Source: Octopus sinensis
Taxonomy: Eukaryota
Assembly (NCBI RefSeq): GCF_006345805.1
Contig: NC_043012.1
Coordinates: forward strand, 36,704,001-36,768,000
DNA length: 64,000 nucleotides
Direction: 5' to 3'
Part shown: positions 4,366-60,900 of the stretch, piece by piece
Layout of the letters: each line of letters begins with the position of its first letter
How positions within the stretch are numbered: position 1 is the stretch's first letter
Position numbers and translations under genes: made by a program
The notes under the pieces: generated by a model
Seen by the model: only the letters and a program-made list of their open reading frames with translations
The model's database searches: none
What the model was told of the DNA's origin: nothing

Positions 4366-4645
4366 GTCCTGGTTTAGGACGAATGTTGCTGTAATTTAGC
4401 CCCAGGAGACATTGTCTCCAGCTGGCTATACGACATGATCTGTGTCCTTATATTTTCGAACAAGGGAATCTAGCACCCCAACTCAGCTCAAAACAATATC
4501 TGTGTATCATGATTTCCAGATATTGTTTTGAGCTGAGTGGGGGTGCTAGATTCCCTTGTTCGAAAATATAAGGACACAGATCATGTCGTATAGCCAGCTG
4601 AAGACGGGGGCTAAATTACAGCAACATTTTATCCTAAACAAGGAC
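4366..4645. repeat. Foldback / MITE-like hairpin, about 135-bp arms, 14-nt loop
   Basis: 4366-4502 is the near-exact reverse complement of 4517-4645. Confidence 0.9.
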
Positions 4646-4989
4646 TGCTGCTGAATATCTCTCGTTGTGAGATTTAAGAATAGTAATTTTCTAAAAACTT
4701 TCAGCTAAAAACAGTAGGTTTTGACTTCTACACCAAGACAATGTTGTAGGACCATGACTTCCATGTGAAATGCAGCAGAATTTGGAAAGATAGGGATGAT
4801 GTTTGTGTGTGTTGTTTGAATGTTTACATTATATATTATGTCAATCTGTTTGCTGAAAAATGCAGTAATTATCTTAGTTTATTGTTAATGAGGTGATAGA
4901 AAGCAGTTCACTTATTTTGCTGTAAATATAATTTATAGGGTAAAAAGCATTGGGGCTGCTTCCATGTAATAATCACTGGTATTGGTGCC

Positions 4990-5345
4990 ATGTAAAGAGC
5001 TCTGGTACTGGTACCTTGTAAAGAGCTCTGGTACTGGTACCTTGTAAAGCATTCTAGTACTGGTACCTTGTAAAGAGAGCTCTGGTACTGGTACCTTGTA
5101 AAGAGCTCTGGTACTGGTGCCATATAAAGAGCACTGATGCCACGTAGAAAGCACTGGTGTTGGTGCCACACAAAAAGCACTGAACCATGTAAAATGCTCT
5201 GATGATGGTGTCATGTAAAAAGCACCCATTACACTCTAAAGTATTTGGCATTAGGAAGGGCATCCAGCTGTAGAAATATTGCCAACCCCTGTTGAGCCAT
5301 CCAACCCATGCTGGCATGGAAAACGGATGTTAAATGATGATGATA
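4990..5345 (+). mobile_element. SINE 3' half with (GAT)n tail and internal about 26-bp tandem repeat
   Basis: About 5 copies of AGAGCTCTGGTACTGGTACCTTGTAA, then the family motif GGAAGGGCATCCAGCTGTAGAAA...GGAAAACGGATGTTAAATGATGATGAT. Confidence 0.8.
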
Positions 5346-5779
5346 TGATTTATATGGCGATATCTAGTTTTCATTGTCGAATCCCTATGAGCACAGTCCA
5401 TGGTGGACAGTGCACGTACTGGTGTAGGTGTTCAGGGAGCATTTAGATGCTCAACCACAAAGGATCATCAAGGAACACATCATTGCATTCAGAAGTAGAC
5501 TGGATTATGATAACCTGATAAGCTATGGGGAGCTCTATATATAACAGTAGCAGACATACATCTATTTGTACACACAGTCTTTTCACTGTGTGTTTGTGCA
5601 TGTGTGTGTTCAGAGTCTATGCAGAGCTACAGCAGCAGTAAACAGTGACGTAACCGTTTTACAGCTCAGCTACAAATGATGCCATCACTATTTACGAGGT
5701 GGGCTGCTGATGATGTAAACGTTAGTGGCTGTGGCTGCAAACAGGTGACATCTCTAATGGTATTTGTTTAATTTTCCAG

Positions 5780-6081
5780 GAAGAGAACAACTGTGAACTG
5801 TATCCCGGTGTTAACAATGTAGGTAATACCTACTCCCTAAACTCGTTCAATGGTAACGTCCAGGCAGAGAAACAAGCAGCAGAGAAAGACATTGTGGAAA
5901 CAGCGGCAGTGAACCCTATGGAGTTCAAGCTGAGGCAGTCGGAATTTATGGAAGCCCAGAAGCAACAGGCTGAATTTATTGAAGCCCAGAAGCAACAGGC
6001 TGAGTTTATGGAAGCTCAAAAGCAACAGGCTGAGTTTATGGAAGCCCAGAAGCAACAGGCTGAGAAATTAGCCGAGGAAAG
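5780..6081 (+). CDS. BTB/POZ-domain protein, internal exon A (EENNCELYPG...(EFMEAQKQQA)x4...LAEE)
   Basis: CTAAT branch point at 5754, TTTTCCAG acceptor, open frame over all 302 nt, AG|GTTAGT donor; the phase-2 end joins exon B in frame. Confidence 0.75.
5942..6061 (+). repeat. Coding 30-bp tandem repeat x4
   Basis: GA(A/G)TTTAT(G/T)GAAGC(C/T)CA(G/A)AAGCAACAGGCT repeated four times in frame. Confidence 0.95.
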
Positions 6082-6793
6082 GTTAGTAGTCTTGCTATTT
6101 AAGTGTGAGATTTGTTGTTAGTTCAATATTTGATCTAAATTTTGAAGAATTCTCAGTTTTATGCTAAGACTTAGGAAGACTCTTAAAAGGTTTTTCAGAG
6201 TTTTCCAAATATGGTTCATTGTTTTAGTGGTTTAGTTTTGATTTATTTTCTTGCATTTACTTCTCCTGTCACCAACCCTTAACTTACTCTTTGTCCAGAA
6301 AGGGTTTCCTTTTTTTTTTTTATTTTGGATTCAAAAAGAATTGAAATGTGTAGAGCTAGCAGATGATTTGCTGACAAAAAATATCAACAGATGTCACCTG
6401 TTGCAGCCACAGCCACTAACGTTTACATCATCAGCAGCCCACCTCGTAAATAGTGATGGCATCATTTGTAGCTGAGCTGTAAAACGGTTACGTCACTGTT
6501 TACTGCTGCTGTAGCTCTGCATAGACTCTGAACACACACATGCACAAACACACAGTGAAAAGACTGTGTGTACAAATAGATGTATGTCTGCTACTGTTAT
6601 ATATAGAGCTCCCCATAGCTTATCAGGTTATCATAATCCAGTCTACTTCTGACTGCAATAATGTGTTCCTTGATGATCCTTTGTGGTTGAGCATCTAAAT
6701 GCTCCCTGAACACCTACACCTGAGTTCCAAACAATGATAGTGGTGAAACATGTGTAGGAATTTTATTATAAACTTGAGTTTATCCTTATTCCT

Positions 6794-6874
<81 letters not shown>

Positions 6875-6924
6875 ACTAAGTGGAGCAAGATCACACATGA
6901 AAACGAAAGGTGTCGCTGAGAAAC

Positions 6925-7394
6925 ACAGAGAAAATAGGCGATGAGTGTACATGCATATTTCAGGAAGTATTGCTCTCTCATCAGTATCACATCCAACTGA
7001 TCAACAATTCACAAACACATTGCGTAAATATATCAGTGATGTAACACTAATATATATCTTGTTGTATTTTGGGATGGTCATTTTTTTTTTGGCCTAATAA
7101 ACACACGCACTATATATATGTGACGAAAGATTTTCGGACAATGGATATGAGTTAAAATAATAAAATAAGAACAGTAATAAACTATTGGAGGGAAAATATA
7201 TAGTGCGTGTGTTTATTAGGCCCCCCCCCAAAAAAAAATGACCATCCCAAAATACAACAAGATATATATTAGTGTTACACCACTGATATATTTAAGCAAT
7301 GTGTTTGTGAATTGTTGATCAGTTGGATGTGATACTGATGAGAGAGCAATACTTCCTGAAATATGCATGTACACTCATCGCCTATTTTCTCTGT
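6925..7394. repeat. Inverted repeat, about 195-bp arms (6925-7117 / 7196-7394), about 80-nt loop
   Basis: Reverse-complement match with a few substitutions and a homopolymer indel. Confidence 0.9.
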
Positions 7395-7949
7395 CTTTGA
7401 TTGCATTGTTTATACAGACATATCTGTGGCATGAAATGCAGTAAATGTCAGTGCTGGCTCTGAACTCTATAGAAAATCCGTAGAGGTAAACTTGTGTGTG
7501 TGTGTGTATATATATATATATTTATATATTTGTGTGTGTGTATGTTTTGAATGTGAAACAATGTGTATATGTTAATAATATACACGCTGTCTGACAGCTG
7601 ACAGAATGTTCATTGATAGATGTAAAAACACTGCAGTTGGTGACAGTTAAAAGAATGGAACAATTGAAATATGGTGTCAGTTTATTCGTCGGATTTGCTG
7701 TTGTTTTGTTTTAACCTGGTGTTGGCTGTCAGCTCTGGTCAGCCTGACCAAACATCACACACGATCCAACTGTGACCATTATTCAATGTGTCCTTTTGTT
7801 ATTCTTTTACTCGTTTCAGTTGTTGGGCTGTGGCCATGCTGTGGCACTGCCTTGAAGAGTTTATTCAAACGAATTAACTTCTAGTACTTATTTCTGTGTC
7901 TTCTACTTACTTGTGAAGGTGCATGGCTTCTACTGACAAGTGAAAGCAC

Positions 7950-10569: not shown

Positions 10570-10711
10570 GCAACAAAGACAGAACGAAAATAAAGTATAT
10601 AAATATATGGTTTTGAATCACGAGAAGAAAATTCTGGAAACTCTTCGAACGCTTTGGAAAGGAAACCAGTTCTGTGATGCAATGTTGCAAAATGAATGCG
10701 TGTCCATTCCA
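10570..10711 (+). CDS. BTB/POZ-domain protein, exon B (QQRQNENKVYKYMVLNHEKKILETLRTLWKGNQFCDAMLQNECVSIP)
   Basis: Long pyrimidine tract + TAG acceptor, CCA|GTAAGT donor; H..IL..L..LW...FCD is the canonical BTB N-terminus; in-frame ATG at 10607. Confidence 0.9.
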
Positions 10712-10748
10712 GTAAGTTTCAGCCATTGTTTATTGTAAGATAACCAGT

Positions 10749-11175
10749 CATCATCATCATTGTTTAATGTCTGTTTTCCATACTGGCATGGGTTGGACGG
10801 TTCGACTGGGGTCTGGGAAGCCAGGAGGCTGCACCAGGCACCAGTCTGATCTGGCAGTGTTTCTACCGTTGGATGCCCTTCCTAATGCCAACCACTCCGA
10901 GTGTGTAGTGGGTGCCACCAGCACAGGGGCCAGAGAGGGCTAGCATTGACCATGATCGGATTGTGCTTTTTATGTGCCACCAGCATGAGGATCACTGCGA
11001 TTTGATTTTGATGTACTTGACTCAATAGGTCTCCTCAAGCATGGCACGTCGCCCTACAGTCCAAGGTACTTTTGAGTGGGCTGGTTATGCGACACTGGTG
11101 TAGGTTACAGCTGTGAACTCACTTTATTTGCTGGGTCTTCTCAGTCACAGCATATCTCCAGAGGTCTCAGTGTCC
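10749..11175 (-). mobile_element. RTE LINE 3' end/UTR with (GAT)n tail
   Basis: Reverse complement matches 37500-38020, which joins the RTE C-terminus to the SINE-shared tail. Confidence 0.7.
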
Positions 11176-14909: not shown

Positions 14910-15494
14910 TTCTCAATATATTATTTTCTCAATACATATTCTCAATATAATATAGTGTACATTTAAACACAAGAGAAACTGCCTTCAACAGGCAGCTTTA
15001 CATGCTAGAAGAAGCAGTCAAAACGACCGAAACCACATTTAAGAGCAATCTTCAAAAGGAATGAAAAATAAAAACTTCTACTTTATTTTATTCCGGTCAG
15101 ACCCTAGGTTTCTAAAATTTTTTTAGCAAATGAAATAATTTGCTTGGCGAATTTTTCATCAGTGGCCATGCCATAACACTTACATAATTAAGAGATGATT
15201 AACACGTGTCTCTTTGTTATACATGATAATTTTTCAATTGCTAAAAACATATACGTAAAATATATATAGGGTAGTGAGTTTTTTTTTTAGAAATTTCACT
15301 ACCAGTGGCCTAGCGTGTATAAAAAGTCAATAGACAACATATTCTCAATACAAAATAGTGTACATATAAACACAAGAGAAAACTTAAATGTGGTTTTGAT
15401 CGTTTTGACTGGTTCTTCTAGCATGTAAAAACTGCCTGTTGAAGGCAGTTTTCTTTTGTGTTTAAACGTACACTATTTTATATATATATATATA

Positions 15495-16510: not shown

Positions 16511-16624
16511 TATAAATGTTTTGAACACTTTGGAAAGAGAACCAGTTCTATGATGTAATGTTGCAAAATGACTTTGTCTCTATTCTGGTCAATTTTAGCT
16601 GTTGTTTATTGTAAAATAACCAGT
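16511..16624 (+). pseudogene. Decayed duplicate of BTB exon B 3' part plus intron start
   Basis: Aligns with 10598-10748 with an internal deletion of about 32 bp; donor degraded to GTCAAT; no acceptor. Confidence 0.85.
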
Positions 16625-17089
16625 GGCACACAAAATGCATCCAGTAAACCCTGTAATGTAGTTGGTGCTAGGAAGTCGTAGAAATCCTGCCAAAGCTGAC
16701 CCTTGAACTTTACATGCGACCCCCTGCAACTCACCGGATTCTGTCCAACCCATGCCAGTATGGGAGCTGGGCATTAAATGGGGATGAATCCTTGTGCAAG
16801 TGTGTGCTACTATAGTCCTGGGCCAGCCAAGGCTTATGCATGGACTGAATAGATGGAAACTGCAGGAAGACCATTGCATGTTTATATATAACCAACAGAG
16901 TGCCACAATGTATACAATAGCGACTGTTTAGCCATTTTCACAAAAGTTTACTTCTAAAGTTAGCAGTCTGCTACTATAGTCTTGGTAACACTAGTATATA
17001 TATATATATATTATACACCTAAACACATATTATCTCCCCTATTCTTTTAGTAATATGATTGTTTTTCCTTCATAATTTTCAATGTTATA

Positions 17090-18863: not shown

Positions 18864-19937
18864 GTGCATAAAATCCTCCTCATTGCGTGCTGTCCAAAAA
18901 TCTTAGACACGTACGACTACATTATGAAAGACACCAACGTCCAAGTGTGTTTCCCCCGCAAAGTATCTGCTGACGCTCTCAGAGCCTTTGTTGATTACCT
19001 TTATAACGGGTCATTAAACTTAAGTAAATCTATCCTCGACAGCATGGAGTACCTCTCAGGGATGCTGGGTTTGGATGATATTCGTCAACTGTGCAATCAA
19101 TTTCGATTAGACTTATTTAATGATTCCAATAATGTGCCTGACAAGACCATTGTAACTGTTAGCCACTCTCAGAATACTTCAGGGCTCCATCTTTCTTTGT
19201 CGAATCCCCCAGCCACACCACCGCCACCTATAATTCGCCTCTCATCACAAACGACTTTGTCTGCAATGTCCACGACCAATATACAGATGCCATCTTCTTC
19301 TCCACACTACCAAGATAATCGGAGAGTAAGCTACTCACAGAAATCTTCAGAAAACAGATTTAATATTTTACCAGAACATTCTACAGATTCTGAGGTTTTA
19401 AATGTGAACTCAATAAAGTTAGAACCAGAAGTTGATTTGACGGTTGATGATTGCACGGAGGTGAAGCAGGAAATCGCAACGTACCAAAACAGCGAAGATT
19501 GTCAATTTGGTTCTTGGTCACAGATCGATTCTCAGAGTGACGATTCGTTATCACATCGTAAAAAGAATGACTCTGTTAATTTTGACATCCAAACCACAGT
19601 TGATCTGAGTGTAACGCCTTTAAAATCTTTCACAAGTCATTCACAAAAGACTGCTAGCCATGATGACCCCGACTTGCAAAGTGTCATAACTATATCCCCT
19701 TCAAATTCTCCACTTCACTCCCCGACTTCTGTCGATTCTTCTCCTGATGTCCAGACTTTTGAAGTAGATTCAGAAACACCAAACCTAAAGACACATCTGA
19801 ACCCTTACCCTGTCGGCTTAGTTATGGCTAACACACACAATCTCACATTAACAGAAAATAATAGGAAAAAAAGAAGCACTTTTGAAGATTTTGATGTAGA
19901 TTTTGAGTGCAAAAAGTCTAAAATGGCACTTCAGTGA
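18864..19937 (+). CDS. BTB/POZ-domain protein, terminal coding exon C (VHKILLIACCPKIL...MALQ*)
   Basis: TTTCAG acceptor, phase 0 with exon B, giving FCDAML...VHKILLIACC...ALRAFVDYLYNG (BTB core); 357-codon open frame ending TGA TAA; AATAAA at about 19951. Confidence 0.9.
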   Translation: MHKILLIACCPKILDTYDYIMKDTNVQVCFPRKVSADALRAFVDYLYNGSLNLSKSILDSMEYLSGMLGLDDIRQLCNQFRLDLFNDSNNVPDKTIVTVSHSQNTSGLHLSLSNPPATPPPPIIRLSSQTTLSAMSTTNIQMPSSSPHYQDNRRVSYSQKSSENRFNILPEHSTDSEVLNVNSIKLEPEVDLTVDDCTEVKQEIATYQNSEDCQFGSWSQIDSQSDDSLSHRKKNDSVNFDIQTTVDLSVTPLKSFTSHSQKTASHDDPDLQSVITISPSNSPLHSPTSVDSSPDVQTFEVDSETPNLKTHLNPYPVGLVMANTHNLTLTENNRKKRSTFEDFDVDFECKKSKMALQ

Positions 19938-26919: not shown

Positions 26920-27960
26920 TGGATGGTTTCAGGCAAGTTGGGTGTCTATAGTTGGTTGGTTAATGTTGTAACAGGAGGCTAAGTGTGTAGGGCAGTTGTG
27001 CTCTCCCCCATCAGAGCATTTTGGAGAGAGCCAAAAAGATGGAAATCAGTTGGTGCAAGGTCTGCTGAATATAGAGGATGGGGAAGAACATGTCAGGCCA
27101 AATCTAATATTCCACCCTGGGGGATTCTTGCTGAATGTGCATTATCATAAAGAAGCGCAACGTTTCTTCTATTGGCGAGTGCAGAGTGTTTCCATAAAAG
27201 ATTTTCATGTTGCAACTGTTGAGAGTGTAGTTGGCGTTTAGAGTTTGATTGCAGTTTAAGAACTCAGAATGAATAATACTGCAGTGATTGCACCATACAT
27301 GCAACATAACCTTCCTTCCGTGGAGGTCAGCCTTTGAAATAGGTTGTGGAGATTTATTCTTGTCAGTCCACTGCCTTTTGTGTTGAACATTGTCATAAAA
27401 GACCCCTTTTTCATCACCTGTAATGATTTTATTGAGAAACAGGTAATTTCTCTGCCTTGAAAGAAGACTTCGTCACTACGCACATGCAATTTTCCCCATT
27501 CTTCTCACCAACAGTATGGAGAACTGGAATACCCAGCTTGATGACTTTTCCTATTTTCTTCCATGTGGTGGCAAATGGTGGATTGCGATATGTTGAGGAC
27601 AACTGCTAATTCTCAAGCACTTTTATGAGGATTGAATTACAGTAATTCTCTTAAAGCCTCTTGACCAAAATCTGATGAGCATCCTGGTCTGAGTTGATAT
27701 CTCAATGGAAAATCTTCAGAACAAAACTTTGAAAATCAATTTTGCACTTGCTGGTCAGTAATGACACCTTGCCCAGAAACACTGCATATTTCCTTTCCTC
27801 TTTCTATGGCATTTTTTCCATTCTTACACTCCTACATCACAAGTCGAATATGCACTTTCATATCAAACAATGACATGCATACTTTCATTGTTTGAGATGA
27901 ATCACAGATGAGACTCTTTTAAGAACAGTCGTCTTCATTTCAGTTTTAAATGCATTGCTA
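26920..27960 (-). mobile_element. Mariner transposase pseudogene (near full length, decayed)
   Basis: Minus-strand motifs HIRLVM.ECKNG, IITGDEKGVFYDN, KVMLHVW...NQTLNA, LLYDNA, HPPYSPDLAP-like and HLFGSLQNAL; many stops and frameshifts. Confidence 0.88.
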
Positions 27961-30654: not shown

Positions 30655-31520
30655 ATATGCGTGGCATGTAAAAAGCACCATTTGAGCTTGGTTGATGCTA
30701 GTGTCACCTGACTGGCTCCTTAGCTGGTGGCACATTAAAAGTGCCATTCAAACGTGGTTGATGCCAATGCCATCTGACTAGCCCCCATGCTGGTGACACT
30801 TAAAATGCACCATTTGAGCATGATCAGTGCCAATGTCATCTGACTAGCCCCCATGCTGGTGACACTTAAAATGCATCATTTGAGCATGATCAGTGCCAAT
30901 GTCACCTGACTAGCCCCCATGCTGGTGACACTTAAAATGCACCATTTGAGCATGATCAGTGCCAATGTCATCTGACTAGCCCCCATGCTGGTGACACTTA
31001 AAATGCATCATTTGAGCATGATCAGTGCCAATGTCACCTGACTAGCCCCCATGCTGGTGACACTTAAAATGCACCATTTGAGCATGATCAGTGCCAATGT
31101 CATCTGACTAGCCCCCATGCTGGTGACACTTAAAATGCATCATTTGAGCATGATCAGTGCCAATGTCACCTGACTAGCCCCCATGCTGGTGACACTTAAA
31201 ATGCACCATTTGAGCATGATCAGTGCCAATGTCATCTGACTAGCCCCCATGCTGGTGACACTTAAAATGCACCATTTGAGCATGATCAGTGCCAATGTCA
31301 CCTGACTAGCCCCCATGCTGGTGGCACTTAAAATGCACCCACTACACTCTCGGAGTGGTTGGCATTAGGAAGGGCATCCAGCTGTAAAAACCTTGCCAGA
31401 ACAGATTGGAACCTGGTGCAGCCTCCTGGCTTGCCAGTCCTCAGTCAAACCGTCCAACCCATGCCAGCCATGGAAAACGAACGTTAAACGACAATGATGA
31501 TGATGATGATGATGATGATG
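30655..31520 (+). repeat. 66-bp minisatellite (about 9 near-identical units plus 2 diverged) expanded inside a family A SINE
   Basis: GCCCCCATGC recurs at 30781, 30847, 30913, 30979, 31045, 31111, 31177, 31243 and 31309; the SINE 3' end follows. Confidence 0.92.
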
Positions 31521-38489: not shown

Positions 38490-40480
38490 ATAATAATTAA
38501 TTCTGGTTTTATTGGCCACAAGGGCTAACATAAATCAAAAACATGTAAGGACAAACACAGGATGAAAAGTAGAAAGGGTTTTGCGAAAAAGAAACGTCCG
38601 TGTAAACATTAGAAAAACAGAAAAATATAACAAATAAAATTTCCAATAGGGGGAGGCACTTTGAAAGGTTACTCATGGAAAAACCCATAAAAGCCACTTG
38701 GTTGAGGGCAGTCAGAGCTTGACGGCACTCGAGGTGCCAAGCGCCCTTTCTTGGTCTGCGTATGATCAAAGTTTCAGCTCTGTCAAAGAGATGAGCTGCG
38801 GAAAGTTGCGTCTGATGAACAGTGACTACACCCGCTCACCGTCCCAGAAACGCTTGAGATGCCATAGTCTGAGTGCATGTCTGCGCATCAGCAGCCACAG
38901 CATGCCAAGGCCTCCGTTCAGTGGCTGTTGACAGCAGATGGAGCCCCTGACCACTGCTACCATGCCCTTCCACAGAAAGTCGAAGAGCAAGTGCACCAGC
39001 TTGGCCAACCAGCGGTCGGGACAAGGGGCGACGGTCAATTGGTAATAGATGACGGATGCGATGTACGCATTCGCCACCTCTGCTTGACCTTCCAGGGACA
39101 GCTTCCTCTCGGCCCATTTCTGGGTGAGATTGGCCACCCTGCTCATCACTTCGGCCCAGTTTTTCTCCACCAGGAGGTCCAGACTGAACCAGACTCCGAG
39201 CAGTTTAATGGGACCATCTGTCCAATGCCCTATGACGCTGTTGGATGGCATGAACTTGCCCCTCCAGGTGCCCAGTTGCAAGCCCACTGACTTTTCTGCA
39301 TTAATTTCCGTACCTGTTACCACTTCGTACTCGTTTAGCATCTCGCCCATCAGGTCGATGCGCCTGTGGCTCGACATTATCACGTTGACGTCGTTGGCAT
39401 AGGCAGACATGCTTTTTCCACATCCCAGATCATGCGGGACACCCCTCAAAGCCTCTAACTTCCACAGCAATGGCTCGAGAGTCATTACGTAGAGGTGGGA
39501 GGAGAGAGGGCATCCTTGGCGGAACGAATGTGAGATGTCGAAGGGCTTGGAAAGGTGACCGTTCACACGTATGACCAAGCAGATGCCACTGTACAAAGCA
39601 GTGATCCACCCGCTCAAGACCGGACTGAAACTGGCTGCCCAGAGAACAGCTGCCAGGTATCGATGGTCAACCCTATCGAAGGCTTTAGACTGATCTAAAT
39701 TGATCAAAGCCACACGCGCGCCAGCTTCGTTACCCACCCTCTCTATGATGTAGTGCATGAGATGGATAGACCTGGTGGGCATGGTGCATGTCTGCGTTTT
39801 GCCAGTCAGCTTGTCCATGACAGCACCAACCTCTTGGCTAGCACCTTGGCCAGAATCTTCAACTCTGCATTGAGCAGAGTGATGGGGCTAAAGTTCCCTA
39901 TCAAGACCCCTTGTTTGGGTCCTTTCTCAGCAATGCCACCACTCCTCGATAAACAAAAGCAAGAATTCTCACATTTTGTTGCCAGTTGCAGTAGACATTC
40001 GCCAAGAGACCTGCAAAGAAGTCTGGCATTGAAGTGTAAAGTTCGTAGGGCAGACCATCCAAACCCGGTGATCTACCTCTCGTGCAACTTTTCATCACTT
40101 CCTCTACTTCTCAGGCAGATATCAGTCTTTCGCAGCACTCTACCTCACTGGCTGAGAGTTGTGGCAGGCCGTCCAGGTACACACTGGAGTCTGACCCATT
40201 GTCCGTCCCGAACAGTCGAGCAAAGTGCTGCAGAAAGACCGCACACATCTGGCTTGTTTCGGAAACCTTGCACCCATTCTGGTCCACCAAAGACTGAATG
40301 GTTGGTTTGTTGCTGTGCTTTGCCTCTGTCACATGGGCCCATCGAGCAGCCTTAGTCCCCTCTCTGCTTACCGAACGTGCCTTAGCTCTGACAATGCAGC
40401 CTTCATGTTTGACATCAAAGTGTTGGTCGTTTAACAAGTGATCTTGTTTCCAAGGCAACCAAACCTGCTCACATTTATAC
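38490..40480 (-). mobile_element. L1/Tx1-clade LINE ORF2 (RT) fragment, frameshifted
   Basis: SPGLDGLPYELY, LDQSKAFDRVDHRYL, RQGCPLS, YANDV motifs in ORFs 40111-40458, 39901-40098 and 38826-39818; (ATT)n tail. Confidence 0.88.
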
Positions 40481-44577: not shown

Positions 44578-45133
44578 ACTATATTTTGATGACACATAAA
44601 GTTATTATTCCATTATTAATGACACAAACCATGTACAGTATACTTCAGAGCGATTAGTTGAGTAAAGGGCGAAACGCCGAAAGTGAAGGATAAGAAAAAA
44701 AGCGGTCATAACGAAAACTGAATTGTAACGATAAGTGGGAACTCAATGTACAATTCACATATTGTTGTGATCAAGTGGTGTCAATATCTGGTTAAGATGT
44801 GTTTATAAACGAGAGGACTGAGAATGGTTGAAATTGTGTTGGTTACAAAGATCACGCACTACAGTTGGAACTAGGAACATGCTATTGTAGGGCACGGAAC
44901 CCAAGGTTTACGCATCCATAAAATAGAGTGAAAGATCAGTTAGAGTAAGGAATTGACTTGTGATATGGGAATGTTTTAGGAATGCAATGATTGCAAGAGG
45001 TTTTCGGTTCTGAGTTGTTATTTAGCGTCCGCTTTCCATGCTGTGCTTCCTGGCCTTACCAGCTCCTGTTCGAACCTCAGGTTCCGTGCCCTACAATAGC
45101 ATGTTCCTAGTTCCAACTGTAGCGAGGAGTACA

Positions 45134-46200
45134 TGGAGTACAGTGAAGAATTCCGGGTAGAGGTAGGGGTCCACCAAGGTTCAGCCCTCAGCCCCCTCCT
45201 ATTTATCGTAGTCCTCCAGGCAATAACGGAGGAATTCAAGACAGGTTGCCCATGGGAGTTCCTCTATGCTGACGACCTTGCTCTAATTGCTGAGTCACTA
45301 TCAGAACTGGAGGAGAAGTTTCAAACATGGAAGGAGGGATTAGAATCGAGGGACCTTAGAGTCAACCTAGCTAAAACCAAAGTACTAATAAGTAGGAAGG
45401 TAGACAAACCACAAATGTCTTCAGGAAGATGGCCTTGCTCGATCTGTAGAAAAGGTGTAGGTAGAAACTCTATATGATGTACCCAGTGTAAGCTATGGAC
45501 ACATAAGAGGTGCAGCAATATCAAAGGAAGGCTAACTGGGAAGATAGTTTTTGTATGTGGCAGATGCTCAGGAGCAATAAACTCTGAAAATCTGCAGAAA
45601 ACAACTTCCGTCACTTTCCAGGGGAAAAAACTAGAAGTAGTTGATAGCTACCATTATCTAGGTGACCAAGTCAGTAGTGGGGGTGGGTGCGCTGAAAGTG
45701 TAACTGCTAGAGTAAAAATAGCCTGGGTAAAGTTCAGGGAGCTCTTACCTCTGCTTGTGACTAAAGGCAGACTGTATGATGCATGTGTACGAACAGCCAT
45801 GTTACATGGCAGTGAAACATGGGCCGTGACTGCTGAGGACATGCGTAAGCTCGCGAGGAATGAAGCCAGTATGCTCCGATGGATGTGTAATGTCAGTGTG
45901 CATACTTGACAGAGCGTTAGTACCCTGAGAGAAATGTTGGACCTAAGAAGCATCAGTTGTGGTGTGCAAGAGAGACGATTGTGCTGGTATGGTCATGTGG
46001 CGAGAATGGATGAAGATAGGTGTGTGAAAAAGTGCCAATCCCTAGCAGTTGAGGGAACCCGTGGAAGAGGTAGACCCAGGAAAACCTGGGACGAGGTGGT
46101 GAAGCACGACCTTCAAACTTTAGGCCTCACTGAGGAAATGACCAGCGACCGAGACCTTTGGAAATATGCTGTGTGTGAGAAGACCAGGCAGGACAAGTGA
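45134..46200 (+). mobile_element. RTE LINE, 5'-truncated (RT to C-terminus)
   Basis: GVHQGSALSPLLF, FLYADDL, WYGHVARM...RGRGRPRKTW; stops and frameshifts. Confidence 0.92.
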
Positions 46201-48388: not shown

Positions 48389-49038
48389 ATATAATTAGTG
48401 AATGGAAGAAATGGAGTTGAACGAAGATTGTACAGAATTCCTTTTATTACATTCTACACATGTTTCAAAGGCCACAATTTTCCGAACACACAAACACAGA
48501 ATTTTTTCAGCCACCTGACAGGTTTTTTCAGCAGTGCTCATTATCTAGTGCCCCTCGCCAACATACGGCCGCGCACACATAGGCTAGTATACACATACAT
48601 GCTTTTAGGTAGGTTTTGTCTCGCCCCTAAAATACACCCTGTTTTCTTAAAATATTCAGAACATTAGTTTTGGTCACACAGAACATCTCCACACCCCTTG
48701 TTCCCATTAATTCCTCACCTACTAGATTTGACCGCGGCCTGACCTGTAATTATTCCAACGGACCTTTTGTCGGCCCCCACCAACCCCCTGATTTCAACGT
48801 ACATTGATAAACAGTTTAACCATGGGCTCTTAAGGAGCGTCCTCGCTCGAATTGCTTTGCTGCGCCTCTGTTTTGTTTTGTTCTGTCAACGTAATTCCTG
48901 CTTTTTCCTGAAGAGAAAGCTGCAATATGGTATCCTTATTTAATCAGAATTTGGAAAATTGTGGCCTTTGAAACATGTGTAGAATGTAATAAAAGGAATT
49001 CTGTACAATCTTCGTTCAACTCCATTTCTTCCATTCAC

Positions 49039-49047
<9 letters not shown>
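48389..49047. repeat. Perfect 95-bp inverted repeat (48389-48483 / 48953-49047)
   Basis: Base-by-base reverse complement with no mismatch found. Confidence 0.95.
48719..48907 (-). other. Putative exon of a minus-strand transcript (UTR or first coding exon)
   Basis: Acceptor CTTTCTCTTCAG|, donor AG|GTGAGG; all three frames have stops, but an internal ATG (MYVEIRGLVGADKRSVGIITGQAAVKSS) is open to the donor; CpG-richer than its flanks. Confidence 0.45.
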
Positions 49048-49438: not shown

Positions 49439-49926
49439 CAAATGTCTCAATTGTGCTCTGTTAGAACAGCCATGAAGTCATTTATTCAAACTGTTTGTCT
49501 CTCCCTCTCTCTCAACATATATAGTTCAAAAGCTGTGTATACACCCTACGGGTTGTGAATATATATTCCTGTTGTCAGAGAATATATAGATATACATACA
49601 TAATAGTTTCTTTATCAGTAGCCACTTACACACACACACACAGAGAAATCCTGTCTGTATCATTTGTCTTGAAAGAAAGAGGAGAATATGATGTTGTGAA
49701 ATTTATGCAGTTCCAAAGAATAACAACTGCGTAAGAGGGGTGAAATGGCTTCAGCTTGTAATCAACACCACATTCTTGGATTCCATTCTTTGCTAGGCTG
49801 CTCTTCCAACATTGGACCAACAGTCAGTTCTAGAAGAACGAAGAGATGCTCTGTGTGTGTGTGAGAGAGACGTGTTTGAATAAATGACTTCATGGCTGTT
49901 CTAACAGAGCACAATTGAGACATTTG
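49439..49926. repeat. Perfect 53-bp inverted repeat (49439-49491 / 49874-49926)
   Basis: Exact reverse complement, extended imperfectly by (CT)/(GA) tracts. Confidence 0.93.
49630..49829 (-). other. Putative non-coding exon of a minus-strand transcript
   Basis: Acceptor CTCTTCGTTCTTCTAG|, consensus donor |GTAAGT; stops in all three frames from the acceptor. Confidence 0.5.
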
Positions 49927-55054: not shown

Positions 55055-55249
55055 TACATTATTTACATTTGACAGATATTTATCCTCATCTTGTTTGTTG
55101 TTAACACAACGTTTCGGCTGATGTACCCTCCAGCCTTCATCAGGTGTCCTGGGGGAATTTTGAATGCCATATGCTTGTAGGCATATGGTATAGTGGTTAA
55201 GAGCGCAGGCTACTAATCCCAACATTCTGAGTTCAATTCCAAGCAGTGA

Positions 55250-55287
<38 letters not shown>

Positions 55288-55428
55288 TCGAAAAATACCT
55301 TAGGAATGAGAACCCAGGTTTGAAATTCCCCCATGACACCTGATGAAGGCTGGAGGGTATATCAGCCGAAACGTTGTGTTAACAACAAACAAGATGAGGA
55401 CAGATATCCATCAAATGTAAATAATGTA
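55055..55428 (+). mobile_element. tRNA-headed SINE-like element with a Penelope-type tail and a 5' inverted copy of that tail
   Basis: A box TGGTATAGTGG, B box GAGTTCAATTCC (55180-55240), (TAA)n spacer, tail 55320-55428 mirrored at 55055-55164. Confidence 0.7.
55335..55380 (+). ncRNA. Minimal type I hammerhead ribozyme motif (mirror copy at 55103-55148, minus)
   Basis: GACAC-CTGATGA-A-GGCTG(loop)CAGCC-GAAACGT-T-GTGTT: stem I, catalytic core, stem II and palindromic ACGT helix III. Confidence 0.6.
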
Positions 55429-57945: not shown

Positions 57946-60900
57946 TACTCACCCATTTACCCATTAATTCACCCATTTACCTGGAACGAATTCACCCATT
58001 TACCTGGAACAAATTCACACCATTTACCTGGAACAATTCACCCATTTACCTGGAACAAAACGCTCTATCCCACAAACTACAACACAGCAACCACCATAAT
58101 ACACATCACCACAACCACCAATATCTCAAACAAGGAATCCCCAAATCTGCCGCTATTCCCAGCGAGACAGATTGTGTTTGCACAGGGATTGCCTTTACCC
58201 ATCTCCCGGGGACTCGTCGGACATTTAAAGATAACCACTCACATAAAAATAGCCGCGGCCACAGTCACCTGCGGTTCCCTAGACAGGAAACCACCTCTTC
58301 TTCCTCTTTTTTAGCTATAATGAATCTAGCAAAAGAACTGGAAAAAAACATCCGAGCTATCACCCACCGCCATCCACCACTATTACCCCACTACACATGC
58401 CATTAAAAAGCAATCAAATAAACAAATCACCAAAACAATTAAAACCATCCACTCTCGCCTCAACATTTTTCTGCTAATGCCAAGGCATCAGCCCTTCACA
58501 ATACACAAAAATGGAAGATAAGATTCCTGGAGGACTGGGTCGAGGCCCATCCAAACCACATCCCTTTCTTCGTCCTCACTGAAACCATCTTAGTGACCTC
58601 CACTTGAAGCCGAGGTGAAAGTTAAAAATTTCAAAACCATTCGTGCTGATCGTGTTGGCAGAAGAAAGGGTGGGACTGCCATTTATGTCCATGATTCATT
58701 CTCAACAGAAGCCATGAACAATTTTCGAATGGATACTGCGAAGCAGTCGCTGTATTCAGTCAACCAACAACTTAACAGTAGTTGGGCTCTACAGACCACC
58801 CCAAACGCCCCTACCATGCTTCAAGGAATGCCTCAACAGCATAAAGTGTTTCATTCAGCAGTGTCAACCTGACAACATTTTAATGATGGGAGATTTCAAC
58901 CTTCCCGGGGTTGACTGGTCTACAAACATCTGCCGCCAGGTTCTTCTCTCTCAACCCCTGACAGGGAGGCAGGGAATCGCTTCTTGACTTCATGGATGAC
59001 TTCTTCTTGTCCCAACTGGTACTCGAACCAACGAGATGTCACAAAAACGTCTTAGACTTAATTTTCAGCAATCACACTGATACTATCCACAATATTGCAG
59101 TGGAGAAAAACCCTACTCTCCGACCATGACATGGTTCTCTGTGATCTGAGATTTCACTGGCCAAAATGCAAAACAAATGTCATCCCTCCTGCTCATCCAT
59201 TTGACACTATGGATTTCCACAATGCAAACTGGGAAGCGATCAATAATGATCTTGCACAAGTCGATTGGTCCTTCACGCACACATACACACCCACTAACAT
59301 CAAAAAGTCCTGGCAGTCACTTGTAGACACCATCACGAACATATGTGCAAGACACACCCCCCATTAAGATCTGCAAACAAATCTAAGTGTCGAATCCCTA
59401 GAAATAGAAAATCTCTCATAAGGAAAATTAAAAGAATCAACAAAAAATCAACATGCTGAAAATACTGTCAACAGCAACACCCCAACCTGACTGCCATCTC
59501 GTCGCTAGAGATTAAAAAACATAAACTCCAAAACAACATGATGTCTATCATCAATAGTCAGCGAAGAGCTGAAGAGGCCTGGGCCATTGAGAAGATCAAA
59601 CTCAATCCCAAAGTGTTCTTTTCATTTGCAAAAAAACACAGAGTCACTGGTTCTACTGTTGGCCCTCTGATTGATGAAAATGGTACTCTTCAAGACAATT
59701 CCAAAACCATGGGAGAAATATTGCAGAAACAATATTGCTCTGTTTTCAGCAATCCTGATATGACTGATCTGGGCTGTATCAGTGATGTTACTCCCCAATA
59801 CACTTTATCGGACATAACATTTGGCGCTCCTGATGTCTTAGCAGCAATAAAGGAAATGAAGCATAATTCAGCAGTAGGTCCCGATAGGTCCCTGCTTGTG
59901 TCTTGAAGATGTGTCAAAACCAACTTGCACCCCCTCTAGCCAATCTGTGGCGGAACTCATTGGATGCTGGATATATACCAGAAGACCTTCTATCCCAGTC
60001 TGTTGTCCCAGTTTTCAAAAAAGGAAACAAATCGCTTGCCGTGAATTACCGTCCATCTATCTCACTCACTCTCATATCATCAAGGTATTTGAGAGGGTGC
60101 TGAGATCGCGTATGACTCACTTCCTTGAGAGTCATAATATGCTGAACCCCCACCAGCATGGATTCCGTAATGGGAGAGATTGCCTGACGCAGCTACTGCA
60201 TCATTTTGATGACATTTTGAGAGCCTTGGGAAAGGGTTCCAACACTGATGTCATCTACCTTGATTTCAGCAGGGCCTTTGACAGGGTTGATCATAAGATC
60301 CTTCTGAGAAAGCTGTCCAATATTGGTGTCACTGGAAAGCTGCTGCAATGGATCAAGTGCTTCCTCTCTAACAGAACCCAACATGTTGTAGTCGAAGGAG
60401 TCAAATCCAGCCCAGCCAAAGTCAGCAGTGGTGTCCCACAAGGCACTGTGTTGGGCCCACTTCTCTCATCATCTACATAAATGATATTACTGACACCATC
60501 AAACACAGCAACATCAGAACCTTCGCTGATGATTCCAAGCTCCAGAAGGTCATCAATGGCGTGGATGACCGAATAAACCTTCAGTCAGACCTACTGGCTG
60601 TTGTCCAATGGGCGGAAAAGAATAACATGTTGCTAAATGAAGACAAATTCGAACTGATCCACTTTGGAAGGGAGGACGCTCTGAAACTCCCATACTCTCT
60701 TCCTTCTGGAGAAATTCTCATGGCATCCAACAACATCAGAGACCTGGGAGTAACAGTGGACAACAACATAAGCTGGGCTACACATATAAGCAGCAAAGTT
60801 GACATGGCCCAGAATGTGTTCCTGGATTCTCAGAACCTTCCAGTCGAGAGATTCCCACGCTATTATCCTTCTCTTCTCCACTTTTGCCCGACCCCACCTT

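What the first reader, a model, noticed from the sequence alone, without database searches (positions are those of the whole stretch)
5421..6720. 333-bp, about 99% identical stem around the repeat-encoding BTB exon A, abutting its branch point
The left arm ends at 5753 and the consensus branch point CTAAT begins at 5754. Exon A is 302 nt with phases 0/2, so skipping it would shift the frame. Exon B has its own ATG (10607) right at the canonical BTB start (MVLNH..IL..L). The stem could therefore switch between a long isoform carrying (EFMEAQKQQA)x4 and a short BTB-first isoform, or yield a 302-nt circRNA.
Basis: partly seen in the sequence, partly recalled or inferred. Interest (0 to 1): 0.7.

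Follow-up and report, generated by a model that had tools for sequence, protein, structure and literature searches.

The report
Inverted repeat bracketing an octopus exon
A real, nearly perfect 333-base inverted duplication lies in the introns on both sides of a coding exon of an octopus FLYWCH/BTB gene; it should fold the pre-mRNA into a long double-stranded stem of the kind known to promote circular RNA, exon skipping and RNA editing, but nothing here shows that it switches isoforms.

Summary
Arms 5421-5753 and 6389-6720 are reverse complements (330/333, two mismatches, one bulged A). They enclose the 302-nt exon 5780-6081, and the left arm ends one base before a CTAAT that lies 22 nt upstream of the 3' splice site.

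The gene is the octopus FLYWCH/BTB gene LOC115220336 (Octopus sinensis; LOC106879774 in O. bimaculoides). Exon A is an old coding exon. It is present in all 13 named isoforms of three Octopus species. Two cuttlefish-type loci have an equivalent exon (260 nt in L001, the same length class modulo 3), and neither has the inverted repeat.

The arm has no other copy in the window, no target-site duplication, and no Rfam or protein-database match. I read it as a young local inverted duplication, not a transposon pair.

The RNA is predicted to form the full stem (duplex -650 kcal/mol). This is the known architecture of complementary intronic repeats around an exon. It predicts ADAR hyper-editing, some back-splicing into a 302-nt circle, and some exon skipping.

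Skipping does not give a BTB-first isoform. It gives a stop codon at 10591-10593, 13 nt before the ATG at 10607.

RNA-level effects, read support and presence in sister species are all untested.

The parts
5421..5753 (+). Left (upstream-intron) arm of the inverted repeat, 333 nt
   Evidence: BLASTN 330/333 against the reverse complement of 6389-6720. It has no other copy in the window.
5754..5758 (+). Candidate branch-point motif CTAAT. The branch A is at 5757, 22 nt upstream of the last intron base.
   Evidence: Read from the sequence. It matches the YTNAY consensus. Its use in vivo is inferred.
5759..5779 (+). Polypyrimidine tract and 3' splice site (GGTATTTGTTTAATTTTCCAG)
   Evidence: Sequence. 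The exon boundary is confirmed by alignment of RefSeq proteins.
5780..6081 (+). Exon A, 302 nt, phase 0 in and phase 2 out. It encodes EENNCELYPG...AEKLAEE, including four 10-residue repeats.
   Evidence: Open frame. Matched by P0007 and other O. sinensis isoforms: tblastn 99% over 103 positions that run two codons into the upstream intron, where the one mismatch falls (exon A is identical). Present in all named isoforms.
5936..6064 (+). 30-nt tandem repeat inside exon A (about 4.3 copies) encoding (EFMEAQKQQA)x4
   Evidence: the repeat finder family D3; self-BLAST.
6082..6388 (+). 5' splice site GTTAGT and the 307 nt of downstream intron that lie inside the loop
   Evidence: Sequence.
6389..6720 (+). 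Right (downstream-intron) arm of the inverted repeat, 332 nt
10570..10711 (+). Exon B, 142 nt, the start of the BTB domain. It contains the TAA at 10591-10593 that is read if exon A is skipped, and the ATG at 10607-10609.
   Evidence: tblastn 100% to O. sinensis isoforms.
18864..19934 (+). Exon C, the rest of the BTB domain and the C-terminal tail, ending with the stop codon at 19932-19934
   Evidence: tblastn 100% to P0007. Pfam BTB E = 2.1e-11.

Best explanation
The feature is a genuine, young, local inverted duplication of about 333 bp of intron. One copy lies on each side of an old coding exon (exon A) of the octopus FLYWCH/BTB gene LOC115220336.

When the gene is transcribed, the left arm, the exon and then the right arm emerge within about 1.3 kb. 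The two arms can then pair into a nearly perfect 333-bp double-stranded RNA stem with the exon in a 635-nt loop.

By analogy with tested cases, this stem should do three things:
(i) It is an excellent ADAR substrate and should be hyper-edited, which weakens it.
(ii) It brings the exon's own 5' and 3' splice sites together, so a fraction of transcripts should back-splice into a 302-nt circular RNA.
(iii) It should promote skipping of exon A. A skipped mRNA is out of frame and stops at 10591-10593, so skipping lowers the output of full-length protein and does not create a new isoform.

Normal inclusion of exon A remains the main outcome. The repeat is most likely a neutral or mildly costly accident, not a selected switch.

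Shown: the repeat, its geometry, the gene model, the reading frames, the predicted fold, and absence from decapodiform orthologues. Inferred: its origin, and every effect at the RNA level.
For: Repeat and geometry.

Predicted fold: the 1340-nt RNA folds with the complete stem, MFE -803 kcal/mol. The arm duplex is -650 kcal/mol, against -96 and -89 for each arm folded alone.

No competing partner for either arm within 64 kb.

Gene identity and constitutive use of exon A.

Age of the exon and absence of the repeat in L001 and in Acanthosepion pharaonis L002.

Against a transposon: no target-site duplication at the unit's outer ends or at the arms' inner ends (sequence), no second copy in the window, no Rfam family, no hit of the six-frame translation in the protein collection. 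The arm also has no poly(A) tail and no terminal inverted repeats of its own (sequence).

Mechanism by analogy. At Drosophila laccase2, species-specific inverted repeats close to the exon are necessary for circularization, and long (about 400 nt) repeats act co-transcriptionally (PMC4617980). [quoted passage not shown] In octopus, ADAR substrates are enriched in introns, and circRNAs are low overall, consistent with ADAR antagonism (PMC9699675).

The window holds about ten other non-simple local inverted repeats without target-site duplications, so such duplications look like a common mutational product here. The rough expectation that one of them encloses a whole coding exon in this window is about 0.04. 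The arrangement alone therefore does not argue for function.
Against: - No RNA data could be examined, so editing, circular RNA and skipping are predictions only.
- All annotated isoforms include exon A, so the stem clearly does not block inclusion. Its real effect may be negligible.
- circRNAs are reported as low in O. vulgaris, with 296 high-confidence cases (PMC9699675).
- I could not retrieve the O. bimaculoides, O. vulgaris or O. sinensis genomic loci. The age, the copy number of the arm in the genome, and presence in an independent assembly are therefore untested.
- The junctions show no microhomology that would point to a specific duplication mechanism (sequence).
Confidence: 0.55

Rival explanations
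1. Selected isoform switch. Regulated formation or melting of the stem decides between a long FLYWCH-repeat-BTB protein and a short protein that starts at the ATG of exon B.
For: The stem abuts the candidate branch point and covers the 20-25 nt upstream of it, where U2 snRNP proteins anchor (established knowledge, not tested here). The exon is not a multiple of 3. An ATG lies 15 residues before the Pfam BTB match. Tissue- or temperature-dependent ADAR activity in cephalopods could in principle tune the stem.
Against: No isoform lacking exon A appears among 13 named isoforms in three species. Skipping puts a TAA at 10591-10593, so the ATG at 10607 follows an upstream ORF of more than 170 codons and would need reinitiation. 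The repeat is absent in both decapodiform loci, and at 99% identity it looks recent. Enclosure of an exon by a local inverted repeat is not rare by chance.
Confidence: 0.05
2. Two independent insertions of the same low-copy transposable element in opposite orientation, like inverted Alu or DNAREP1 pairs. The RNA consequences would be the same as in the best explanation.
For: This is the commonest origin of exon-flanking complementary repeats in other animals (PMC4617980). The window is rich in SINE, LINE and mariner fragments. The octopus genome outside the 64-kb window could not be searched.
Against: Both copies have exactly the same end points. Neither has a target-site duplication, a poly(A) or simple-repeat tail, or terminal inverted repeats of its own. 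There is no third copy or diverged relative in 64 kb. The six-frame translation has no protein-database hit.
Confidence: 0.2
3. Assembly or polishing artefact: one arm was wrongly inserted in inverted orientation in a long-read assembly.
For: Near-perfect identity. One of the three differences is a 1-nt length change in an A run, typical of long-read consensus error. Two more palindromes lie within 1.5 kb (4366-4645, 6921-7398). No independent assembly or reads could be checked.
Against: Fold-back read artefacts give zero-spacer palindromes. Here a unique 635-nt spacer holds an intact, conserved exon with good splice sites, and normal sequence continues on both sides. The neighbouring palindromes are only about 87% self-identical, which looks like real divergence.
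Confidence: 0.12
4. Hairpin-RNA (endo-siRNA) locus: the intronic stem is diced into small RNAs that silence a target elsewhere.
For: A 333-bp near-perfect intramolecular duplex is a suitable Dicer substrate.
Against: No other sequence in the window is complementary to the arms. The arm resembles no coding sequence or known RNA. Small-RNA data were not available.
Confidence: 0.03

Closest known systems
Drosophila laccase2 exon 2 flanked by inverted DNAREP1_DM repeats (Kramer et al. 2015, PMC4617980)
   Same: A single internal exon of an invertebrate gene lies in long introns and is closely bracketed by species-specific complementary repeats of a few hundred nt. At laccase2, base pairing is necessary and sufficient for circularization.
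   Different: The laccase2 repeats are copies of a dispersed transposon family and are only 69-75% identical. Here the arms are 99% identical, apparently unique, and lack transposon hallmarks. No circular RNA has been shown for the octopus exon.
[quoted passage not shown]
   Same: Intronic complementarity across an exon, with two linked outcomes: a circle and a skipped linear mRNA.
   Different: The zip-2 match is 13 nt and is conserved across nematodes. The octopus stem is 333 bp and is not conserved in decapodiform cephalopods.
Mouse Sry, whose single exon is flanked by very long near-perfect inverted repeats and is circularized (from my own knowledge of Capel 1993 and Dubin 1995; cited within PMC4617980)
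   Same: Near-perfect, non-Alu inverted genomic duplication around an exon.
   Different: The Sry repeats are many kilobases long and the circle is the main transcript in adult testis. In the octopus gene the annotated mRNAs all contain the exon in linear form.
Inverted Alu pairs as ADAR hyper-editing substrates and circRNA promoters; ADAR antagonism of circRNA (Ivanov 2015 and Rybak-Wolf 2015, as cited in PMC9699675 and PMC4617980)
   Same: A long intramolecular intronic duplex. The expected editing would weaken the stem and so limit back-splicing.
   Different: Alu pairs are typically much less than 99% complementary and compete with many alternative partners. Here the duplex is nearly perfect and has no competitor within 64 kb.

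Membership tests
Exon flanked by complementary intronic repeats (circRNA-type architecture) | Reverse-complementary sequences, one in the upstream intron and one in the downstream intron | tested here: met
   5421-5753 against 6389-6720, 330/333.
Exon flanked by complementary intronic repeats (circRNA-type architecture) | Functional canonical splice sites on the enclosed exon | tested here: met
   AG at 5778-5779 and GT at 6082-6083. The boundaries agree with RefSeq proteins of three Octopus species.
Exon flanked by complementary intronic repeats (circRNA-type architecture) | Pairing across the exon is favoured over pairing within one intron | tested here: met
   Neither arm has another match in the window. 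The MFE and centroid folds both contain the whole stem. The upstream intron runs beyond the window, so the test is incomplete on that side.
Exon flanked by complementary intronic repeats (circRNA-type architecture) | A back-splice junction or RNase R-resistant circular RNA is detected | not testable with these tools
   No RNA-seq access. The gene identifier is not in the held supplementary text of the O. vulgaris circRNA survey.
Alternatively spliced cassette exon | At least one mRNA isoform that lacks the exon | tested here: not met
   All 13 named isoforms (O. sinensis, O. vulgaris, O. bimaculoides) contain exon A. Isoforms X1 and X2 were not seen.
ADAR hyper-editing substrate | Long near-perfect intramolecular dsRNA within one transcript | tested here: met
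   333-bp stem with two mismatches and one bulge. Duplex -650 kcal/mol.
ADAR hyper-editing substrate | Clusters of A-to-G differences between RNA and DNA | not testable with these tools
   No transcriptome reads available.
DNA transposon or MITE with terminal inverted repeats | Target-site duplication flanking the element | tested here: not met
   Flanks are ...GCACGTACT|arm and arm|TGAGTTCC..., with no duplication.
DNA transposon or MITE with terminal inverted repeats | Multiple dispersed copies | tested here: inconclusive
   None in 64 kb, and no hit in the protein collection or JGI metagenomes. The octopus genome itself could not be searched.
DNA transposon or MITE with terminal inverted repeats | The internal segment belongs to the element, not to the host | tested here: not met
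   The internal segment is a host exon, present at the same place in the gene in two decapodiform loci that lack the repeat.
Inverted pair of SINE/LINE insertions | Each arm has retroposon hallmarks (tail, own target-site duplication, family members) | tested here: not met
   No A-rich or simple-repeat tail, no duplication at either arm, and no similarity to the octopus SINE copies abundant in the window.
BTB/POZ domain protein (host gene) | Pfam BTB match above the gathering score | tested here: met
   PF00651, 44.4 bits against a cut-off of 20.5, residues 129-229 of the exon A+B+C product.
FLYWCH zinc-finger protein (host gene) | FLYWCH domain | tested here: inconclusive
   PF04500 is precomputed for the orthologous isoform P0001. 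The exons that encode it lie upstream of the window.

The most novel reading that the evidence does not exclude
The stem is a maintained, ADAR-tunable regulator. Where editing is strong (neural tissue, cold), the stem is melted and exon A is included. This would couple cephalopod RNA editing to the dosage of a transcription factor. It would require the repeat to be conserved, or kept identical by gene conversion, in other octopods.
Probability: 0.06. Interest if true: 0.6.

Novelty: new member of a known kind. Interest (0 to 1): 0.3.

Why it matters
If the predictions hold, this would be an unusually clean natural case of repeat-driven back-splicing. The stem is single, 333 bp and 99% perfect, and has no competing partner. 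It lies 26 nt from a 3' splice site, around a frame-shifting coding exon, in an animal with very high ADAR activity. That makes it a convenient locus for asking how far editing and co-transcriptional splicing protect a gene from a structure that should be disruptive.

It is not a new mechanism. Local inverted repeats are frequent in this window, so many such cases are expected in this genome by chance.

Tried and rejected
- Orthologous Octopus genomic loci. I looked up P0013, P0009, P0015, P0001 and P0014; none is on record. The comparison among O. sinensis, O. vulgaris and O. bimaculoides could therefore not be made.
- Independent contigs carrying window ORFs that span exon A, the junction between spacer and right arm, or the arm itself. 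None was found.
- First protein search with the exon A+B peptide. It found nothing and missed even P0001, which contains that peptide, so that search was uninformative. A search from the exon B Met onward found the gene.
- Transposon origin. Tested through a window self-BLAST, inspection of the flanks for target-site duplications, a protein search with the six-frame translation and a metagenome pattern scan. All were negative.
- Known RNA family. Rfam gives only sub-threshold matches of generic long hairpins to plant miRNA models, at the neighbouring palindromes. Rejected.
- A composite transposon that carried the exon in. Rejected, because the exon sits at the same place in the gene in decapodiform cephalopods that lack the repeat.
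- An inversion with duplicated breakpoints. Rejected, because the exon is in the correct orientation.
- Conservation of intron sequence between octopus and decapodiform loci, to tell which arm is ancestral. Only exons align.

Full report
OBSERVATION

BLASTN aligns 5421-5753 with the reverse complement of 6389-6720 at 330/333 identity with one 1-nt gap, E = 3e-175. The repeat finder gives the ungapped core as 320 nt at 99%. The imperfections are C5481 opposite A6660, U5488 opposite C6653, and one extra A in the run 5739-5741.

The left arm ends at 5753. CTAAT occupies 5754-5758, and a pyrimidine-rich tract runs to the AG at 5778-5779. The exon is 5780-6081 (302 nt), followed by GTTAGT. The right arm begins 307 nt after the exon. 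CTAAT is the only good YTNAY match at a normal distance (branch A 22 nt from the 3' splice site), but its use is inferred.

THE GENE

Frame 0 of the exon is open for 100 codons. It joins in frame, through a split AGG codon, to an exon at 10570-10711, and then to a long terminal exon at 18864-19934. The product has a Pfam BTB domain (E = 2.1e-11).

A protein search from the exon B methionine onward found uncharacterized protein LOC106879774 of Octopus bimaculoides (98% identical). Its cluster also contains LOC115220336 of O. sinensis and the lifted-over O. vulgaris proteins. Exons B and C of the window match the O. sinensis isoforms at 100%, and one O. vulgaris protein (P0006) at 99.7% in exon C. 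The window is therefore very probably O. sinensis.

The 13 named isoforms differ only at the N-terminus. There, alternative first exons encode different FLYWCH-type domains or, in one O. sinensis isoform, a helix-turn-helix-like domain. All of them then share a common exon (outside the window), exon A, exon B and exon C. No annotated isoform lacks exon A. Isoforms X1 and X2 were not in the collection and were not seen.

AGE OF THE EXON AND OF THE REPEAT

Two decapodiform loci were retrieved: an ENA contig (L001) and the Acanthosepion pharaonis gene (L002). Both have an equivalent exon immediately upstream of the exon B equivalent, encoding a degenerate version of the same Glu/Gln/Ala/Lys-rich repeat. 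In L001 it is 260 nt, again 2 modulo 3. Exon A is therefore an ancestral coleoid coding exon in the same phase.

Neither locus has any inverted repeat around it beyond simple TA runs. Only exons align between octopus and L001.

The arms differ at 3 of 333 positions. That is less than the amino-acid divergence of this same gene between O. sinensis and O. bimaculoides (about 2%). I therefore infer that the duplication, or its last homogenization, is recent and probably specific to the O. sinensis/vulgaris lineage. I could not test this, because no Octopus genomic locus could be fetched.

ORIGIN

The arm occurs only twice in 64 kb. There is no target-site duplication around the whole 1300-bp unit or around either arm, as read from the flanks. 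The arm has no A-rich tail and no terminal inverted repeats of its own. It gives no Rfam match, its six-frame translation has no hit in the protein collection, and there is no hit in JGI metagenomes.

The enclosed segment is host sequence, so the unit is not a transposon that brought the exon in.

The window contains about ten other non-simple local inverted repeats. Several are 94-100% identical, and none has a target-site duplication. Local inverted duplication therefore seems to be a frequent mutational product in this genome, or in this assembly.

I favour a local inverted duplication. A pair of insertions of a rare element and an assembly artefact both remain possible. The usual fold-back artefact gives a zero-spacer palindrome, not a unique 635-nt spacer with an intact conserved exon.

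PREDICTED BEHAVIOUR

As RNA, 5401-6740 folds with the complete stem in both the MFE structure (-803 kcal/mol) and the centroid. The two arms together give -650 kcal/mol, against -96 and -89 when folded alone.

This is the known architecture of complementary intronic repeats across an exon:
- At Drosophila laccase2, species-specific inverted repeats close to the exon are necessary for circularization, and repeats of about 400 nt act co-transcriptionally (PMC4617980).
- In C. elegans, such matches promote both back-splicing and skipping of the enclosed exon (PMC8330042).
- ADAR editing of such duplexes antagonizes circularization. Octopus has many intronic ADAR substrates, and circRNA levels are low overall, with 296 high-confidence circRNAs (PMC9699675).

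I therefore predict heavy editing of the arms, some 302-nt circular RNA, and some skipping, with inclusion remaining the main outcome, as the annotation implies.

The stem also covers the roughly 20 nt upstream of the branch point, where U2 snRNP proteins bind (established knowledge, not tested here). However, about 640 nt are transcribed between the branch point and the right arm. The 3' splice site can therefore be recognized before the stem can form.

THE ISOFORM-SWITCH IDEA

Skipping exon A joins a phase-0 exon to exon B and reads GCA ACA AAG ACA GAA CGA AAA TAA. That puts a stop at 10591-10593, 13 nt before the ATG at 10607.

The BTB reading frame would then lie behind a long upstream ORF. 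The stop would be 118 nt upstream of the last exon junction, which is the classical signature of an NMD substrate. Skipping would therefore reduce protein output, not yield a BTB-first protein.

A circle of 302 nt is not a multiple of 3. Its longest Met-initiated ORF is 68 codons and ends 14 codons past the junction.

CHANCE AND SIGNIFICANCE

I took the spacers of the eight spaced inverted repeats in this window and its three coding exons. From these, the expected number of whole-exon enclosures is about 0.04 per window. Across a genome of gigabase size that implies many such cases without selection. The arrangement is striking but is not evidence of function.

VERDICT

- Observation: confirmed.
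- Interpretation: partly supported. The circRNA and editing predictions are plausible. The BTB-first switch is not supported.
- The feature is a new example of a known kind. Its interest lies mainly in being a clean test locus.

Noticed in passing
Isoform alignment A1; the variable exons lie upstream of window position 1: The host gene uses several alternative first exons, each encoding a different DNA-binding module: three distinct FLYWCH-type N-termini, and one helix-turn-helix-like N-terminus in O. sinensis X5. All are spliced onto one common BTB-containing body. This is the mirror image of Drosophila mod(mdg4), which has a common N-terminal BTB and variable C-terminal FLYWCH domains.
   Followed up: partly
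window 16525-16640 (+): A decayed partial copy of the 3' half of exon B, plus the first 35 nt or so of its intron, lies inside the B-C intron. It translates as TLWKENQFYDVMLQNDFVSIL (58% identical to the real exon). It also aligns to exon B of the decapodiform locus L001. The GTAAGT donor is not preserved, so it is probably a pseudo-exon.
   Followed up: partly
window 4366-4645 and 6921-7398: Two unique, nearly complete palindromes lie within 1.5 kb of the exon-A repeat. One is 280 bp with a 96-nt core at 95% and zero spacer. The other is 478 bp with 172-nt arms at 98% plus an inner 27-nt perfect pair. They give sub-threshold Rfam matches to plant miRNA hairpin models, which reflect only the hairpin shape.
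   Followed up: partly
window 48389-49047, 49439-49926, 55055-55428, 14945-15483, 44859-45122: Further local inverted repeats: 50-106-nt arms, 91-100% identical, spacers of 160-460 nt, with no target-site duplications and no shared termini. Frequent local inverted duplication may be a property of this genome or of this assembly.
   Followed up: partly
window 5758-5765 with 6379-6386: In both the MFE and the centroid fold, an extra AU-rich 8-bp helix forms just inside the main stem. It leaves the CUAA of the candidate branch point in a small internal loop. It is not part of the duplication and may well be chance.
   Followed up: no
window 4944-5227: A minisatellite of about 26-nt period (about ten copies) lies upstream of the left arm, followed at about 5230-5350 by a fragment of the dispersed SINE-like repeat. 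That repeat has at least ten other copies in the window, including an inverted one just after exon B at 10748-10915.
   Followed up: no
window 30661-31339: A tandem array with a period of about 66 bp, roughly 10 copies, 90-94% identical.
   Followed up: no
window 38829-39887 (-), 45100-45474 (+), 59878-60899 (+), 27107-27472 (-): Reverse-transcriptase fragments of LINE-like elements (Pfam RVT_1, E = 1e-13 to 1e-16) and a mariner-type transposase fragment (Transposase_1, E = 2e-12). The 44 kb downstream of the BTB gene looks like repeat-rich intergenic DNA.
   Followed up: partly
one search compared: The word-seeded protein search returned nothing for the 148-residue exon A+B peptide, although P0001 in the same collection contains it at about 97% identity. 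The repetitive query probably defeated candidate collection. A negative from that tool on repetitive queries should not be trusted.
   Followed up: no
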